Source: Fimbriosthenelais zetlandica (taxonomy: Eukaryota). From it: a stretch of DNA of 64,000 bases. The stretch's first letter is position 1; every line of letters begins with the position of its first letter. Where the stretch lies: positions 12,772,001 through 12,836,000 of the forward strand of contig OZ365113.1 of assembly GCA_977030845.1 (NCBI GenBank), read 5' to 3'. The position numbers and the translations under genes are program-made. Positions 15,801 through 43,000 of the stretch are shown in pieces. Below the pieces are notes generated by a model. That model did no database searches. It was given only the letters and a program-made list of their open reading frames with translations, and was not told where the DNA came from.

Positions 15801-18800
15801 AAGCCGTTAAACGTATATTTTTTTTCAAATAACTCAACTCAGCGCCACTCTGTAATTGGGAATGTGTCAAGAGAAAGGAAAGAAAGAAATTAAATACTTT
15901 TGTTCTAAAGTGTTAACATTATGAATGTTTTAGTTGATTTTCACATTGATAAAATTCTACATCTTGGCTCTGAATATCTGTATAACACTTTTATCATTTT
16001 ATAATTTCGCCCTGTATCGAAGAATTGTTGGTCGACAATTTCCAATGCATAAACATTTAATCCATATAATTATTGGCATTGTATGGCTCAGCCAAAACCT
16101 CGTGCCCTACCACAAGAAATCTTATTATCTGGACGTTTTATTTCCTGGAATAAAGTAAAAGTTTTGACTGACCTACCTGAGGATGATGAGCTGCTCCGTG
16201 AACTAAAGATATCCTGAATGTGTCTTGGTGAGTTTTGGGGAGGGGGGGGGGGGAGTACCAGCACACGTTGACAACCTGGCGCCAGGTGAAGGTATGAAGC
16301 TAGTCTCCTCTTTTCTCTCCCTCTTCTCTATCCGCCTCTAGCCGCTGCAGGAGCTCAGGCAATATTGCTGGTTGGCATCACATGAGTTGCTCCTGCTACT
16401 CCCGACATCTGCGCTTGGAGGTGTCGAGCAGTTGGCCAACACGAGCATCTGCATTCTGACCCCATATGACAGATGGCCGTCAGTGGTCATACAATGTGGT
16501 CTCTACTGATTGCAACACAGCCAATTCTCCCTTTCAAGCAGTCATCATCAGCCATATTGAATCAACAGATTGCTCTACACGATTGGTTCTTGGTTTGATA
16601 CAACTATCGATGGACCTAATACAAAAGAGAATAATATTAATGCATTAGACATTTAACATCTTGATAATTTCTGTTTTAATTTGTAGACCTTAATTATTAC
16701 GGACAGCATAATTAAGAAAAACCAGTAAGCTTTTCCTAAAGCACTTTGTGTTGGAGGAAAAATGCCCAAGATAATTTAACCAATTTGCTAACCTCATGCC
16801 AGAGATGGTACCATCAAATGGCATGTCGTTTTTAACATGAGTAGAACATTAGTTCCTGAGTACATCCTCCAAAGATAACAGCTGGGTAGCCTGAAGATGT
16901 TGCAATGTCATAACCCACCATGAGATGTCCACGCCCCTGGCAATTGTCTTTCCATTTAGGCAGGCTGTACATGTTACTGTATCTCCGTTATATGCACCAG
17001 TTTCAAACCAGGTGGAAACTATATTCATTACCAGAACATGGTTCCTACAAAAGATCCTAAAGATCCTACTGAATTAATTAGAAGAGTACTGTATAATATA
17101 GTCCATCTTGTCTAATCTGCATCAACACAGAATGAAAAAGACAATCTGAATGTTTCGTATCTCACTTTCGGATCACATTAATTACGTTGGTTGAAAGCAA
17201 AGCTGATTTTTCTCATATTGTTTTTTTTAACATTATTATTTTTTTTTTTAAAGATTTTGGAGAAAATGTGTTTTGATAAGGATGTTGCCTTCCCTTTAGA
17301 TTCTCTGTGTGATCCCTCTGATTGTTGGAGGGCACCCATTTGTTCTGTAACTGTTGCATGTCTGTTCTGTATTAATCCTGATAGAAATACGAGACAGGTT
17401 TTCCCCAGGGGCAGACCCGTGTTTGTTGGACGAACAAAGGCATGATCTGACCGGCCTACAAGACCTTTAGTATAGAAGTTTGTGCACTCCAACAAACCCT
17501 TTATGTCGCTACTCATATATTGACTACTGTACCTCGTTAGGTAAACCCTAAATGTGTCATTCGTGCTCACCAATTCATGATAACCCAGGTATAAATTACT
17601 CCATGCCATGGGATGCCTGGCAGATATTCCATATGAGAACATAATTATAGGAATCATGGCCTCATAAAAATTGTTTCTAAACACATTCTTATATAAAAGA
17701 AATAAAGTGACTGACGTCTGAGGGTAAAGGTAAGACACGTTAAAACTGGTGGCTGTCAACACATGTGAAGCCTGTCATCTAGGAGAGAGAAAGGTCTTTC
17801 GGTTCTTGTGCGTTAATGTCAGCAGGTGATGGATTGTTCCACATGGAATTGTGAGTGATAAAGGCAATCACTGTGGTCATTACTATGGAAACATCGAATA
17901 CAAGCAGGGTCCTGACCAGAAGAGGATAGGTAATAATCAGCATAAAGCCAACTTACTGTCTACCACAGGATGGATGCTGAGCACTTCTTCAAGGATGCAA
18001 TTCTCTATGATTAGGAGTCTGGATTGACTGCAAGTTAGGAAGAGGACTTCTATGACTTGTTCATATAAAATGATGCACTACATTTGCTCATGGTAATCCT
18101 AGGGATTATAATTATGAGCAAAGAGTTAGGCTACTGGGGCGAGTGGTGTCGTAAAAAGCGGCCTAAAATTATATTACATATCATGAGGATGGCCATTATG
18201 TACATGCATGACACTGATCCGAACAGGAATGACACACATAGATTTCAGAAGTGCCCTCGTGAACCCCTCATAAGTTCCCTGTTAGAATTAGCTTAGGTTA
18301 AGCTGGAGGAATGCACCAAACCTTCTTCAAGACAATAATTATAATTCCATCAGACTCAGGAGTGCAGGATCTCAGCTCCGTTAAGTGCGTTTAGATCGCA
18401 TTGGATTTATGTCAAGTGCATTGAGATTTCGAGAAGCACATCTCTTCAGTTGGAAACTTGTTCTCAGCAGCTTGTTGTGAGAAGGCCAATACGTAATCTC
18501 CACCAAGCATGGAGCAAAGGCCTTTAAAAAGTCAAATTAAATCAAATATTTTGCCGTAGAAAAGCTGAACATTTTGCATTTCTATGATTATACGGGCCTA
18601 GTGACTTTATGCGACGTACTATGACAAATGTGACGTACTATCGTTATTCTAAACACCCATTGACTCGATTGAGCATTGCAGATTACAAAAAAAAATAATG
18701 CTGATCTATTGGAGCAGATGAATACGGTAAGCTAATTCCACGAGAAATGAGCATTCATGTCCTATCAAAAATCTCTGAAGCATTCATATGATATTGCATT

Positions 18801-36247: not shown

Positions 36248-39200
36248 TTAATCGGGCATGTTCCTTTTGGACCCACACAACAGTCCCCTGAAACTGGCAA
36301 GAATTCCTGATTCCTCACGCTTGGGCATCCGGTTTTCAATGGGTTGCTGGCCCTTTCTCTTCCTTTTCTCAGCATTAAGGAGATCGACCATTTTTTGGTT
36401 TTCATACTTTACCGCTAACTTGTTTGGTGTCCATCCAGCAATAGTGACTTTCTTGAGGCTTGCGCCATCTTCCAAGAGGATCTCCGCAATGTGAATAAAG
36501 CCATACTGGATGGCCAGGTGAAGAGGTGTGAAACCTTTACTGTCCTGCGCATCGATTTCACTCCCTGAGGCTATCAACAACTTGACAGTCTCTATGTGGC
36601 CATTCTCAACTGCCAAATGCAGGCCTGTGATATCCCTCCTGTCGAGGTATTGGCGGGTAGCTTTGATATCAGCTCCCTTGTCAAGCACCATTTTGACACA
36701 GGTAGTATGACCATTGTGCGCTGCTATGTGCAGTGGTGTCATATTGGAATGTCCCCCAAGGCCTGCCCTAGCGTGTACGTCAGCTCCTGCCCGAAGAAGA
36801 GCAAGTAGGATGCTCTCATTTCCTCTCTCAGCTGCCCAATGTAGTGCAGTGTAGCCTCCTGTGGCTGTCCTGTTGACATCAGCTCCCAGAGCTATCAGCA
36901 TCTGAACAGACTCCACATGTTGGTTGGAAACAGCCTGATGTATGGGTGTAATGTTGGTGACATCACCCATCACCTTCCCAACATTGAGATCAGCACCAGC
37001 ATCGGAAAGAAGAGGTAGAATGTCTGTGTGGCCATTTTGTGCTGCTAGATGAATAGGGGCAACATCAGCATGGTCATGGAAGTTAGCTGTAAGATTTGGC
37101 ATAGCACCAGAGGCAAGAAGCTCTTTGACAAGGTCAATATTACCTTGTTGCGAAGCATAGTGAAGGGCAGCATACCCATTACTACTTTGGGCATTGACGT
37201 TAGCTCCAGCTTTAATCAAAGCAGAAGCCGTCTCTGAGTGATTGTTGAAGACTGCTTGATGTAATGCAGTGATTCCAATTCTATCCTTACTGACCTTCCC
37301 ACTGTCGAGATCAGCTTTGGAGTTGATCAATTCCTGTACCACTGCTGTATGACCATCTTGGCTAGCAAGATGTAAGGCAGTAACGCACATGTGCTTATCA
37401 AAGGCAGCTTGCTTGTTGATATCACATTTTGCATCAATTAACATGCGTGTTGTTTCAGCATCGCCCTTATCTGCCGCCCAGTGTAAAGCAGTGTATCCAT
37501 CTACTTCAAGTATGACAGTTTCTTCGAACACTGATGCATCTTCGTCCTCATCACTCCGTGCACCATATCCTTCATCATTACTGTGGGATTTAGGTACGTT
37601 CTGACTCTGAACTTTGCGCTCCTCAAAATCCTCTCCATATCCTTCATCCCCTTTGATCTTCTCAATTGGTTTCTTTTTAACCTGGAGGATTTTGGTTCTT
37701 TCAGCAGCATCAACATCACATCCAGCATCAATGAGAAAGTGTGCCACTTGATGATGGCCATGCCTTATGGCATAATGGAGAGGTGTCTGGTTACAGGCCT
37801 GCTTTGACGTTGCCCCAAGATTGATGTCACAGCCTGCTGCCACAAGTTTGAGGACCACATTCTGATGGCCATAGCGTACAGCATGATGAAGAGCAGAGAA
37901 GCCATCTTTGTCCTGGGTGTTTTTCTCACATTTTGCCTCTAACAGGATAGCAACTATTTCTTCCATACCTTTCCTAGCAGCTACATGAAGGGCTGTCACT
38001 CGGACTCTCTTGAAATGAATCCTGACTTCATTGACATCACACTTTGCATCCACCAGAGCTTGGATTATGTCTGGATTCTCATTCTCCGCTGCGATGTGGA
38101 CTGGGCGGGCTCCCTCACCTTTCCCATCATCACCCATGCACTCTACATCGGCTTTATGCTCGATGAGAATCTTGACAATATCTACATTATCTCCCTGGGA
38201 TGCCAGATGAAGAGGTGTAATGGATTTACTATTTTTAGCATTGACATCACTCCCACCTTCAATGAGAGCCTCCACCGTGCTGATGTCCCCACTCTCAACA
38301 GCATCGTGTAAAGGAGTGATGTCCGAAATCGCATGACTCAGGCGCAATGCTTTTACATCTGCAGAATTATTGATGAGGAGTTTGACCAGGTAGACATCGC
38401 CATTCTGACAGGCCATGTGTAGGGCTGAACTTCCGGTGTTGTGTTCTGGTGCAGGCCTCTTGTTGACGTCACATCCTGCAGCAATTAGCTTCTCAACCAC
38501 CACCCTATTCTTGCAGAGGACAGCTGTCATCAGAGGTGTCACGCCTTTGCCTGTTGACCTGTCTATGTCAGCTTTGGCCGCCAACAGAATGTCCACCACA
38601 TTCTCGTTAAGGGACGCAGCAGCAATGTGAAGAGCTGTCCTTTCCTTCTGCAAAGAAATATATGAAACCGCTGAGTTACCTACGAAGAACATGTTTCTGG
38701 TCACATTCAATCTTCGATATAATATAATCATCAGATTTTTGGCAAAAACATAATAGTGGTCTATAGATATTGATTAGGGCCACTTCTACTAGTCCTTTTC
38801 TTATTCAGGAAGCAAGCCACTGGCCATTGGGTACTCTGATCTATTATTTATATGTAACCTTTAACTACCATTCCACATCTACCACATACGAAGCTACTGA
38901 CAATAATATTGACTGATATTCATCGATTCATAACTAATCTTCAGTAACTGCACGTTGCCAAATCATTGTGTACAGAAGCCACGAGAGAAATCAAGGATGC
39001 TCTATACAAATGTGAAAGAAAAATTAATGAAAATAATTTGTCTCAGGTTTAAAATCAATTGAGCAGAGGCTATAGTTTACAATTTATAGTGTGTTTCAGG
39101 CATGAATGAAGGTGAAAGTATCAGTTGAAAACGTGTAGATGATTATAATTAATCTTGCAGATTGATGCCTCAGATTAAAATGTGAATTGAGAGACCATAA

Positions 39201-40008
39201 ACAGACATAGACATAAAAGGACGACCTATAGATGTTTTTACAGGTAGATCTATATATAGAGACCTTGGATTAGAATGAGGCAGACCACATTATAGTCATG
39301 GCAAGCAAAAGACGCTGCAAACTACCATGCAGGTGATGTGCTCTGCATCAAGTATGGCTTGGAAGGGTATCAGCACAATGAAAAATACTACTTTAGAAAA
39401 AGCTACTGTTGTAATTATGAATATACAGTTCGTCTTACCTGATCAGCTGCATTAACATCGATGCCTTGATCAAGGTAACGTTTCACCTCTTCTTCCTCTC
39501 CCTTCTCAACACTAGCAAACCAACGCTTCAATTCTTCGCTCAGTTCTACAGGTGGCGGCACTGCATCTGCAGCGAATACAGCCTCCACCTCTTCATCCCC
39601 ATCCATCTCCTCCACCCCCTCCTCCCCTCCTCCTCCTCCTCCTCCCTCCTCCCTGATTGCCATCTCCTGTTCCTCCACTTCTCCCTTCTGTGGCATCATT
39701 GATCTCCTGCCTCTATCTGCGAACATGGACAGTCTCTCTCCTTGGCCTGTCGTGGATCTTTTCGTTCGTTTCAGTTCAGCTTTCTCTGGACTGCTGTCCA
39801 CAGATGGCGTCATGTTTGAAGTGCCCCTCATCTTGGCCAGAAAACTAACCCCTCGTTTACTTTTAATGTTGGTAGTGCTCCCTGGGCTCCTCTCCTCCTC
39901 GGGAGAAATTCCGATGGGGGAGAGGAAACCAGTGCGAACATTGGCAGTACGAGTGGTTGGACCATCCTCGCCATCATGGGGGCCTGTATTCATAGCTTCT
40001 TCCATCAT
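36248..40008 (-). CDS. Large ankyrin-repeat protein (~990 aa, ~21 repeats) with a low-complexity acidic N-terminus
   Basis: Coding exons 40008-39439 (the exon starts at acceptor 40056; donor cag|gtaaga) and 38647-36248 (acceptor ttgcag|aag, 2400 nt including stop). The phase-0 join gives AADQ|KERTALHIAAA; repeated TPLH/TALH..A..G motifs. Confidence 0.93.
39611..39652 (-). repeat. (GGA)n-type microsatellite encoding poly-G/E in ankyrin exon
   Basis: cctcct repeats on the + strand encode EEGGGGGGGEEG. Confidence 0.8.
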
Positions 40009-43000
40009 CGCAGCTCGTCTTTCCGATGACCGGGAGGCCCTGGACCGGTATGGTTTCTGTAACAAAAGAAACAAATTGATTTTAAAGTCATATCATGAAT
40101 TTCGAAAATGTTATGAAAATGACTTTCGAGCAACTAAAATAATTAATTGTGGCCGAATTGTGACCAAAACAGGCTCCAGTTTGTCCTAATTACCGCATAT
40201 ACCGACAGGGTTCCTTTGATTCAAAGAATTAAAGTGATCATGACATTTTAAACATACTATGGACTTAGATTCTTTCCGAGTCGAGGTATAGTGGGGTCTG
40301 TAAAACTCTGTTTTGCAACTCTGAATAAAAGGAGCATGAAGGCAACGTGTGGAAAAAAGAATATCCATCCATACTTATCACTCACTCTCTCGAGATCTTT
40401 GCCTCATTGAAATCTTCGATCTAAGATTCAGAAAGCGTGATAAGCCTCACCTCTAAATTAAGTCGTTTCCAGACTAAAGCTATTTAGAGTTGCAAAAGCA
40501 CTCATAGGCACACATCGAACTACATCCCTATAGGATTGAATGCATTCAAAGTGTTTAGAACATGTTACTGTGAATTTTGATCATCAATGAATTTTGACAG
40601 TCATATAATATTATACATGTAATAGATTCTGGCCATCGTGCCTTGCTCGCGTCTCTTGATTGATATAAACCTGATATAATATGTAGTTTCTCCCATTTTC
40701 AATACTTCAAGTGTTAACATCCGATCTTTAATCATGTAGTCTAATCGTTAATTTGGATACTTCTATCATATTACATTATCAGTATTTACCCTCATTATCT
40801 CATTTTTTTGTAGCAACGCCAACGCTTAAGATCCAAACTGAGGATATCATTCAATATACTAGTTGTGAACCTAAATGTCGGTAAGACTTCAAACGTACCC
40901 TCGCCTCTACCCAGCAAACGGTTATCGGTGAAATTAGATGCAGAGAAAAATGTCAGGATGTTATTTGAATGTCGATTCTCGCCCATCCCTTCATATGATC
41001 TATTCTCATTAACGGTGAGTTGACCTATTATGCGGAAATGTGTAGCTTTTCCATCAGCTTTGCTAGTTCAGTAAGAGCGGACACAGAGGTGCAGCAACCT
41101 GGCTATCTCTCATCACTACATATTATTAGATGCGAGACACGGGAAAAGATTAACTCATTATTATGTGAGTTGGAAAAAAGTATTTTGTCTTATCTGCAAT
41201 CCTCCAATAGAGACACATTTGCATGTCCATATAATCAACATTTGGATTTAAATCATGAGAATGAATTACTGCCTTAGGATACCGTCCATAAGCTTATAAT
41301 TCCCGAATAGAGACAAAAAGGGATTATTTATGTTGGTTACATGACAGGTCCAAAAACGTTAGGCCTTTACTGGCTTGTTAAGCCCATTGCTTCGACAATG
41401 TATTAACATTGAAGCATATACAGGACTGTTATGCTGAACAATCAAATTTATCACCAAATATTCATAACTAAGGAGATCCCCTTTCAAGAGTTCATGTGAG
41501 AAGAGAGTTATCTATAACAGCAAAATCAAAAATGCCAATCAACATGAGAATTATCTGGAGACAAATCGAAGATCCTTTTGTTCTTCTGATAGACGCTGTC
41601 AAGAGGCTTTTTCCGAAATGTCTCACTCGTTAAAAAATCTTAGCCAAATGCCGTTAATGACTGTACAATCGAGGGGCAGGGAAAGGAAGGGCTAAATATA
41701 AAGTGAAACTTGAACTTGAGACATAAGAATCAATATTAAATGTCAGAAATCCAAATATAAACTTGGGACCTATTTCTAAATAATTGTAGTCATTTCAAAT
41801 ATTATACTTTTCAAAGAAACATTGCACTATATGGGGCCTACTAGCGTTGTACAAGATTTAAGCACATAACACGCTAACATCAATGTTAAATAGAACAGAA
41901 TCATTTCCGCTGCATTAGATATTCGATGGCAAAACTATATCCCAAATATAAATTATAATATAAAGTAGGAATAAAGGAATAACGAATTTAACATGGCCAA
42001 ATCATCCATTGAGATGGTAAAGGTCAAACCATTGATTGGTTCTTATTATTTTCATCAAATTAATTACTTTTTTCTTTGCTGTGTTTGTCATGTTTTGAGA
42101 GTGTAAAAACGATGGTACTCTATACAATGAAGGACACCGGCATTCAATGTTGGACAATTACTCCTCCAGGCATTTCCTTCCGTTTTCATGTACTACTGAC
42201 ATTCAGCAAGCTGCGCCTATAATTTCTTACAGCTACTCCCAGTTTATATGGAATTTCGGCTTTCATTTTAAAATTGATTCAACATCTTCAAGGATCTCAG
42301 TTTCTTAAATGTGTGCTCAGGAATTTAAAGCAGCTATAGAACATTCTGTCGAATTTCTCCTTCTATACAAAGTCACATGGAATGAAATGTGTAGTAGGTA
42401 GCCAGCTTAAAACTTTTATAAAGGTTCGAGTCTGTTAATTGCCATGATGAGGATTTTTATAAGGAATTAATGAATAAGAACTCGGGAAATCTTTTTGTGC
42501 CCAAGTCCAGAAAAATGAAATTAATGGTCCCTGTTGGAGAATCCATTAAATCAAAATTATGACGTGGATATCCAACATCTTATCAGTATGGTCAGACTTG
42601 CCAACATTGGATTTGATTTCTCACGGTATCAAATATGCAATTTCCAGTATCATGACTGATTCATGTGTGGAAAACGTGAAAGAATGGCTTAACTAAACGT
42701 TACCATTTCTTGAAAAGACAGTATTGTATAGACCTAAATGCTATCTCGACTAAGTGCAATTTTCTCCTGAGCAAATTGTTTCCTTTTGAAGTTATGTCTC
42801 GCCTTCTTCCCTGGGATAGTAATACAAACAGGAGGAAGTCTCACATCTCTCTTCTATGACACGTACAGGCTGCTTTGATCCTGGTGCAAATGACTGATGA
42901 ATTGTGTTAACATGCAACTTTCAGCAAAAATGCCAGCATTATTTTGTGACTACATTAACTCAAAATTCAGTGAGAGAGTACATGTATAGTCGTATAGGTC

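What the first reader, a model, noticed from the sequence alone, without database searches (positions are those of the whole stretch)
36400..38647. Ankyrin array with a strict 33-37-37 residue super-repeat
Counting between TPLH-type anchors gives 33,37,37,33,37,37,33,37,[insert],37,37,33,37,37,33,37,37,33,33,cap. Canonical ankyrin repeats are 33 aa. Here two of every three carry exactly four extra residues in the beta-hairpin finger, the usual ligand-binding surface, giving a 107 aa period kept across ~6 units despite high sequence divergence. The whole array lies in one 2.4 kb exon. Inference: ancient triplet duplication, with selection to bind a periodic partner (a filament or repeat protein) or to hold an altered solenoid curvature.
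Basis: partly seen in the sequence, partly recalled or inferred. Interest (0 to 1): 0.7.

Follow-up and report, generated by a model that had tools for sequence, protein, structure and literature searches.

The report
Ankyrin array with three-repeat rhythm
This is an intact animal gene for a protein of about 989 residues made almost entirely of ankyrin repeats, in which every third inter-repeat loop is short and the other two are four residues longer; this rhythm is old and conserved in a small, unnamed gene family, and what the protein does is unknown.

Summary
On the minus strand, a 2.4 kb exon (38647-36248) encodes 20 ankyrin repeats. Their anchor-to-anchor spacings are exactly 33,37,37,33,37,37,33,37,[98],37,37,33,37,37,33,37,37,33,33. 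A 37-residue spacing makes up only 1-3% of spacings in about 260 other repeat-rich ankyrin proteins.

The pattern is a family trait:
- Orthologues at about 40% identity keep it.
- A paralogue elsewhere in this genome (contig C10) shows it about seven times in a row.
- Distant relatives in a nemertean and a flatworm contain runs of it.

The two long-loop classes have different conserved motifs. Same-phase repeats are more alike than out-of-phase ones in the C-terminal half and in the paralogue. AlphaFold2 models both proteins as single solenoids with two extended beta-hairpin fingers, then one short loop.

My best reading is an ancient duplication of a three-repeat unit, kept as a structural module in an uncharacterised scaffold protein. 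A conserved C-terminal basic/Cys motif (LLCG) may tether it to membranes; that step is inference.

Multi-repeat periodicity in ankyrin arrays is already described in general (PMC7314423). I therefore class this as a new variant of a known kind. The periodic-partner and curvature ideas remain untested. No earlier finding covers it on other DNA.

The parts
39439..40008 (-). Coding exon 1 (190 codons from the ATG at 40008): about 150 residues of disordered, acidic/Gly-rich N-terminus, then an N-cap ankyrin repeat (..LKRWFASVEKG..GIDVNAADQ). It ends at the donor CAG|gtaaga.
   Evidence: No Pfam family hits this exon. An equivalent exon, with an acidic tract followed by a ..AVWFAAV.. cap, lies upstream of the orthologue in locus L010.
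38648..39438 (-). Intron between the N-cap repeat and repeat 1 (gt at 39438-39437, acceptor ..tttctttgcag at 38648).
   Evidence: Sequence read. The orthologue in L001 has an acceptor at the same place, three residues before A-[LI]-H of repeat 1.
36248..38647 (-). Coding exon 2 (799 codons plus stop): 20 ankyrin repeats and the C-terminal tail, 2400 bases.
   Evidence: Pfam Ank, E = 5e-131, 18 stretches.
37706..38647 (-). N block, repeats 1-9. The eight loops between its repeats (after repeats 1-8) are 4,8,8,4,8,8,4,8 residues; the loop after repeat 9 is the acidic insert.
37499..37705 (-). 69-residue acidic loop after repeat 9, where the phase slips. Its end (..LEVD-G-Y-TALHW) looks like a short-loop junction.
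   Evidence: It is variable in length in orthologues (spacing 55 or 58 instead of 98). AlphaFold2 pLDDT is below 50 for model residues 329-373.
36536..37498 (-). C block, repeats 10-18: three gapless 107-residue units (long, long, short).
   Evidence: Repeat spacings (anchor-to-anchor) of repeats 10, 11, 12, 15, 17 and 19 are the same in all 12 family-A sequences, except for one 38 instead of 37 at repeat 11 and one 32 instead of 33 at repeat 19.
36344..36535 (-). Repeats 19 and 20 (33-residue repeat and degenerate C-cap), running into a basic KRKRK stretch.
36272..36292 (-). Conserved C-terminal motif F-R-G-L-L-C-G (family consensus [KR]-[LF]-R-x-L-[LM]-C-G) inside the disordered basic tail (36248-36343).
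   Evidence: The motif is present in the window protein and in all 12 fetched family-A sequences that reach the C-terminus (11 as L-L-C-G, one as L-M-C-G). Among the 507 fetched proteins, L-L-C-G in the last 15 residues occurs only in those 11. It is absent from family B.

Best explanation
This is a real, intact two-coding-exon gene for an all-ankyrin solenoid protein of about 989 residues. It has a disordered N-terminus, 21 repeats split by one acidic loop, and a basic tail with a conserved Cys motif. It belongs to a small, unnamed family seen so far in spiralian-type animals.

The array is built from an ancient three-repeat unit: one repeat followed by a canonical 4-residue loop (S), then two followed by 8-residue loops of two distinct kinds. 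The L1 loop reads x-A-x-F-[DE]-[DE]-x-x. The L2 loop reads [TG]-[KR]-x-[YFW]-x-[DE]-R-x.

Shown here: the unit was multiplied long ago, before the split of two paralogous genes, and loop lengths and loop motifs have been kept since. In the models each long loop is an extended two-stranded beta-hairpin finger. The finger edge of the solenoid therefore carries pairs of long fingers separated by a notch every third repeat, that is every 107 residues.

Inferred, not shown: the protein works as ankyrin-type solenoids do, holding extended segments of partner proteins in the groove formed by the inner helices and fingers. The long-finger pairs would shape that surface. The C-terminal polybasic stretch plus Cys would tether family-A members to a membrane by S-acylation.
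For: Gene and array:
- One open 2.4 kb exon, canonical splice sites, and 18 Pfam Ank stretches.
- The pattern is exact and rare elsewhere.

Family A:
- Orthologues P0001 and P0008 (40-43% identity) keep 33,37,37 at nearly every position.
- Twelve family-A C-halves (the window protein plus 11 fetched) keep repeats 10, 11, 12, 15, 17 and 19 at the same spacing, apart from two single one-residue differences. Long loops are never shorter than 37.
- The intron position is shared with P0001's locus.

Family B and distant relatives:
- The own-genome paralogue on G000:C10 (1052-residue open frame) shows six perfect 33,37,37 runs in a row, after one perfect run and one 33,34,37 variant upstream.
- Its orthologues P0002, P0013, P0285, P0286 and P0425 do likewise.
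- Lineus longissimus 'ankyrin-2-like' and a Macrostomum lignano hypothetical protein contain 33,37,37,33,37,37,33.

Unit structure:
- Phase-specific loop motifs were derived from 41 L1 and 34 L2 loops.
- Same-phase similarity holds within the C block, within the paralogue and across the two paralogues.

Models:
- AlphaFold2 mean pLDDT is 84.8 and 89.3. Hairpins are predicted in 7 to 8 of 11 long loops here and in essentially every long loop of the paralogue's regular S-L-L region. No strand of three or more residues lies in any short loop.
- The best structural match is the 24-repeat ankyrin-B solenoid, 4rlv, TM 0.58.

Tail motif.
Against: - There is no expression evidence. No sequencing run was listed, and the Logan contigs that carry relatives look genomic.
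- No partner, localisation or phenotype is known for any member, so the functional part rests on analogy with ankyrins (PMC4358367, abstract only).
- In the N block the repeat cores show no period-3 similarity (33.5 at offset 3 against about 45).
- Exact +4 is not universal. Loop 2 is short in P0001 and P0008. Some lineages add further residues to loops 13, 14, 16 and 18. P0006 has long loops of 36-40.
- Indels are rare in ankyrin repeats in general (9% of repeats; PMC7314423). Length retention alone is therefore weak evidence for specific selection.
- Whether neighbouring long fingers contact each other could not be checked, because the tools return no coordinates.
Confidence: 0.75

Rival explanations
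1. Passive relic. A three-repeat unit that happened to contain two +4 loops was duplicated. The lengths persist only because indels in ankyrin arrays are generally deleterious. The rhythm has no function of its own.
For: - Insertions occur in only 9% of natural ankyrin repeats and are mostly one residue long (PMC7314423).
- Other arrays carry length-alternating super-repeats simply through recent duplication. P0148 alternates 34/37 and P0268 alternates 32/37, with 80-88% identity between same-phase repeats.
- The N-block cores have lost all period-3 similarity.
Against: - The long loops have class-specific conserved residues shared by paralogues at about 30% identity.
- They are about as conserved as the helices (0.73 against 0.78).
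- They are modelled as ordered hairpins at pLDDT above 90.
- Lengths change upward in some lineages but never fall back to 33.
Confidence: 0.2
2. One reading: the 107-residue period is matched to a periodic ligand (a filament or another repeat protein), or exists to set a special superhelical curvature.
For: - The periodic pairs of long fingers lie on the usual binding edge.
- The period is kept in two paralogues and in distant relatives.
- The fit to ankyrin-B is only moderate (TM 0.58, rmsd 11 A).
Against: - No partner is known.
- The rhythm slips by one repeat at the acidic loop, which would break register with a strictly periodic ligand.
- A moderate TM between a long predicted solenoid and a crystal structure is usual, so it says little about curvature.
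Confidence: 0.12
3. It is just a divergent orthologue of a named all-ankyrin protein: canonical ankyrin, a PP6 regulatory subunit (ANKRD28/44/52), or NOMPC.
For: These are the best named sequence hits (25-30% identity) and the best structural hits.
Against: - There is no ZU5, UPA, death or channel domain.
- Scores drop sharply between family members and these proteins, from 769 to 525 bits.
- Their arrays have 33-36-residue spacings without the 33,37,37 rhythm.
- This genome has its own regular 33-residue arrays, for example on G000:C37.
Confidence: 0.03

Closest known systems
Membrane-binding domain of canonical ankyrins (ANK1/2/3; PDB 4rlv, 7tw3, 8cs9)
   Same: A long uninterrupted ankyrin solenoid of more than 20 repeats. 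It is the best structural match of the model (TM 0.50-0.58) and the best PDB sequence match. Ankyrins bind targets through their 24 repeats (PMC4358367, abstract), and ankyrin-G is membrane-anchored through a palmitoylated Cys (PMC4820748, abstract).
   Different: Ankyrins have 24 repeats of 33 residues plus ZU5-UPA-death domains. This protein has 21 repeats in a short-long-long rhythm, one acidic loop and no other domain. Its candidate acylation site is at the C-terminal tail, not inside a repeat. Identity is only about 25%.
PP6 regulatory ankyrin subunits ANKRD28/44/52
   Same: All-ankyrin proteins of about 1000 residues. They are the commonest named hits.
   Different: Identity is 25-29%. 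Spacings are mostly 33, with irregular 34-37. They have no period-3 rhythm and no LLCG tail.
Ankyrin arrays with higher-order periodicity (Galpern, Freiberger and Ferreiro 2020, PMC7314423)
   Same: That survey of about 258,000 ankyrin arrays (257,703) reports internal periods of 2, 3, 5, 6 and 7 repeats in pairwise repeat identity. It explains them by duplication of multi-repeat units.
   Different: That work scores sequence identity after removing insertions. Here the period is carried by loop length and loop motifs, persists at only about 40% identity between units, and is conserved across orthologues and paralogues.
Recent length-alternating arrays seen here (P0148: 34/37; P0268: 32/37)
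   Same: Super-repeats whose member repeats differ in length.
   Different: They have period 2, and same-phase repeats are 80-88% identical, so the duplications are young. Here same-phase units are about 40% identical.

Membership tests
Ankyrin repeat proteins (Pfam PF00023 / PF12796) | Tandem helix-loop-helix-hairpin repeats of about 33 residues that match the Ank profiles | tested here: met
   Ank E = 5e-131 with 18 stretches; Ank_2 E = 2e-128. The AlphaFold2 model shows paired helices throughout.
Canonical ankyrins (ANK1/2/3) | 24-repeat membrane-binding domain followed by ZU5-ZU5-UPA and death domains | tested here: not met
   Only Ank-clan families hit the 827-residue ORF, and none hits exon 1. 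The protein ends 30 residues after the last repeat.
PP6 regulatory ankyrin subunits (ANKRD28/44/52) | Orthology to ANKRD28/44/52: full-length similarity well above that to other ankyrin arrays | tested here: not met
   Identity is 25-29%, no better than to ankyrins, NOMPC or bacterial arrays. True family members score far higher (548-1298 bits against at most 472).
The unnamed short-long-long family (A: this gene; B: G000:C10 paralogue) | Runs of 33,37,37 spacings with an L1 loop x-A-x-F-[DE]-[DE]-x-x and an L2 loop [TG]-[KR]-x-[YFW]-x-[DE]-R-x | tested here: met
Subfamily A of that family | Acidic loop after repeat 9 and the C-terminal motif [KR]-[LF]-R-x-L-[LM]-C-G | tested here: met
SOCS-box ankyrin proteins (ASB) | C-terminal SOCS box of about 40 residues with a BC-box Leu four residues before the Cys | tested here: not met
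   There is no Pfam SOCS hit. By eye, the residue four before the Cys is Arg, and the motif lies 4-9 residues from the end.

The most novel reading that the evidence does not exclude
The short-long-long triplet is a distinct structural module of ankyrin solenoids. Two neighbouring extended hairpin fingers would be locked together by the conserved aromatic and acid/Arg residues, giving a binding edge with a 107-residue period (about 3 nm, estimated from my own knowledge of ankyrin solenoid geometry, not measured here). The module would have evolved to read a periodic partner, such as a cytoskeletal polymer or another repeat protein, in a spiralian-restricted family of membrane-tethered scaffolds.
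Probability: 0.12. Interest if true: 0.6.

Novelty: new variant of a known kind. Interest (0 to 1): 0.4.

Why it matters
Ankyrin arrays are a textbook case of a uniform 33-residue repeat and the template for designed binders (DARPins). This family keeps a fixed long-long-short finger pattern through deep divergence. It is a natural example of a higher-order ankyrin module defined by loop architecture rather than by recent duplication. That could inform how finger length is tolerated and how it can be used to sculpt the binding edge. It also flags an uncharacterised gene family with at least two paralogues, whose public members are labelled only 'ankyrin-2-like' or 'hypothetical'. The interest is moderate. 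The general principle of multi-repeat duplication units is known, and no function is attached yet.

Tried and rejected
- Expression: two run searches listed no run (one search got no answer). Write 'none was listed', not 'none exists'.
- Exhaustive representative search: the top 150 are dominated by giant ankyrin proteins through summed scores. It was useful only as a background set.
- ESM Atlas features, AlphaFold DB clusters, PDB by sequence and PDB by fold gave only generic ankyrin arrays, with no close relative.
- Cluster look-ups gave no names or accessions for the close relatives. Their organisms remain unknown.
- Logan contigs carrying relatives (L009, L011, L012) were checked as possible transcripts. 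They start at splice acceptors or run into unrelated sequence, so they look genomic and give no expression evidence.
- Literature: six searches found no description of a 33-37-37 ankyrin family.
- Curvature and finger-to-finger contacts could not be measured, because structure prediction returns no coordinates.
- A SOCS-box reading of the tail motif was rejected (see the membership test).
- The antisense ORF at 37985-38311 (+) was dismissed as the shadow of the coding strand.
- Complex prediction was not used, because there is no candidate partner.

Full report
OBSERVATION

The window is AT-rich animal DNA (36-41% G+C). It has a G+C bump at 36-40 kb. The only long ORF there is on the minus strand, 38731-36248, 827 codons. 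Pfam sees 18 ankyrin-repeat stretches (Ank E = 5e-131) and nothing outside the ankyrin clan.

I located TPLH-type anchors by regex and with an HMM built from the 20 ungapped repeat cores. Both give spacings of 33,37,37,33,37,37,33,37,98,37,37,33,37,37,33,37,37,33,33.

The 29-residue core of every repeat is gapless. All length variation sits in the loop between helix 2 and the next TPLH, which is 4 or 8 residues. One loop has 69 residues and is acidic.

CHANCE

- In 114 other repeat-rich ankyrin proteins, 53% of 2864 spacings are 33 and 3% are 37.
- In 148 giant ankyrin proteins from an exhaustive HMMER search, 1.2% of 5832 spacings are 37, and the string 33,37,37 occurs three times in total.
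- Given the composition, the lag-3 ordering of long and short loops has permutation p = 0.009 here and 0.0005 in the paralogue.

The pattern is not chance.

GENE MODEL

An upstream exon (ATG at 40008, donor CAG|gtaaga after 39439) adds 190 residues. These are an acidic/Gly-rich, disordered N-terminus and an N-cap repeat whose loop joins repeat 1 at a 33-residue spacing. An acceptor-like site just upstream of the ATG suggests a further 5' non-coding exon.

The protein is thus about 989 residues with 21 repeats, 20 of them in the 2.4 kb exon.

The rhythm is not one unbroken series. The N block reads S-L-L, S-L-L, S-L-[69-residue loop]. The C block reads L-L-S, L-L-S, L-L-S, then S and the cap. 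The end of the long loop (..LEVD-G-Y-T-A-L-H-W) looks like a short-loop junction, so the phase slips by one repeat there.

FAMILY A

- P0001 (metagenome contig, 40-43% identity) and P0008 keep 33,37,37 at nearly all aligned positions. The exceptions are loop 2, which is short in both, and a shorter acidic loop.
- P0001's locus has its big-exon acceptor at the same position as here.
- A second group (P0040, P0053, P0070, P0284, P0400-P0407) consists of C-halves only. In locus L010 the upstream exons with the N block and the acidic N-terminal exon are visible, so in that organism the array is split by introns.
- Across the 12 family-A C-halves (the window protein plus 11 fetched), repeats 10, 11, 12, 15, 17 and 19 keep the same spacing, apart from two single one-residue differences. 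Others gain residues in some lineages but never drop below 37 or 33.
- The window protein and all 12 fetched family-A sequences with a C-terminus end in [KR]-[LF]-R-x-L-[LM]-C-G plus a few basic residues. No other fetched protein does.

FAMILY B AND DISTANT RELATIVES

- This genome has a paralogue on contig C10 (42% identity to the C block). It is a 1052-residue open frame with the rhythm repeated about seven times. A control array on C37 is uniformly 33-34.
- P0002, P0013, P0285, P0286 and P0425 (43-62% identity to it) share the rhythm. P0006 keeps short-long-long but with long spacings of 36-40.
- A profile search added two named, uncharacterised proteins that contain 33,37,37,33,37,37,33: Lineus longissimus 'ankyrin-2-like' and a Macrostomum lignano hypothetical protein. 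They are nearer to family B, at 27-28% identity.
- Earlier notes on this genome point to a lophotrochozoan-type animal. I did not check this, but it is consistent with those two hits.

THE UNIT

- The three C-block units align without gaps at 38-41% amino-acid identity and 48% nucleotide identity.
- Same-phase cores score 64-66 (BLOSUM sum) against about 46 out of phase. In the paralogue the figures are 52-55 against 44-47.
- In the N block there is no such signal (33.5 against about 45).
- The two long-loop classes differ. L1 is x-A-x-F-[DE]-[DE]-x-x (41 loops). L2 is [TG]-[KR]-x-[YFW]-x-[DE]-R-x (34 loops). Both hold across both paralogues.
- Phase identity also holds weakly between paralogues (p = 0.015).
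- Long loops are about as conserved as the helices (0.73 against 0.78).

The triplet therefore predates the A/B split and has been maintained since.

STRUCTURE

AlphaFold2 gives confident single solenoids, with mean pLDDT 84.8 for exon 2 and 89.3 for the paralogue.

- Long loops are modelled as EEE--EEEE hairpins: 7 to 8 of 11 here, and essentially all in the paralogue's regular S-L-L region.
- Short loops carry no strand of three or more residues.
- The acidic loop and the tail are disordered.
- The best solved match is the 24-repeat ankyrin-B domain (4rlv, TM 0.58). AlphaFold DB clusters give only generic arrays at 29% identity or less.
- No coordinates are returned, so curvature and finger-finger contacts remain unmeasured.

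COMPARISON WITH WHAT IS KNOWN

Galpern et al. 2020 (PMC7314423) showed that ankyrin arrays often have internal periods of 2-7 repeats in pairwise identity. They also showed that insertions are rare (9% of repeats, mostly one residue). The principle of multi-repeat duplication units is therefore known.

I also met young examples with length alternation. P0148 alternates 34/37 and P0268 alternates 32/37, and their same-phase repeats are 80-88% identical.

What is particular here is an old, diverged triplet whose loop lengths and loop motifs, rather than overall identity, carry the period, conserved through orthologues and paralogues. Six literature searches found no description of it.

MECHANISM

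Shown: an ancient three-repeat unit, conserved long fingers, and a solenoid fold.

Inferred: a scaffold that holds extended partner segments along the groove and finger edge, as ankyrins do (PMC4358367, abstract). The paired long fingers would shape a surface with a notch every third repeat. Family-A members may be membrane-tethered through the polybasic/Cys tail, by analogy with Cys palmitoylation of ankyrin-G (PMC4820748, abstract).

No expression data, partner or phenotype is available.

VERDICT

The triplet-duplication reading is supported. The periodic-partner and curvature reading is open. I class this as a new variant of a known kind, of moderate interest.

Noticed in passing
G000:C10:8902937-8904538 (locus L003:40-3195, + strand): A paralogue of this gene in the same genome. 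It is a 1052-residue open frame without introns, with an even more regular 33,37,37 rhythm (about seven units), and it lacks the LLCG tail.
   Followed up: yes
L010:3950-10554 (JGI metagenome contig, 51% G+C): An orthologous gene in another organism, split by introns. It has an acidic N-terminal exon with the N-cap repeat, N-block pieces in different frames, and the C half as one exon. The 'short' proteins P0040, P0284 and P0400-P0407 are therefore last-exon calls, not truncated isoforms.
   Followed up: partly
Proteins P0148 (3157 aa) and P0268 (1278 aa): Other ankyrin arrays with length super-repeats of period 2 (34/37 and 32/37). Same-phase repeats are 80-88% identical, so these are young duplications of a two-repeat unit.
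   Followed up: partly
window 40050-40080, minus strand: An acceptor-like site (..tttgttacag|AAACC) about 50 bases upstream of the ATG suggests at least one further 5' non-coding exon. It was not located.
   Followed up: no
window 37985-38311, plus strand: A 108-codon ORF antisense to the ankyrin exon. It has no support and is most likely a shadow of the coding strand.
   Followed up: no
window 17178-17762, minus strand: The only other ORF above 170 codons in the window (194 codons, GTG start). It was not examined.
   Followed up: no
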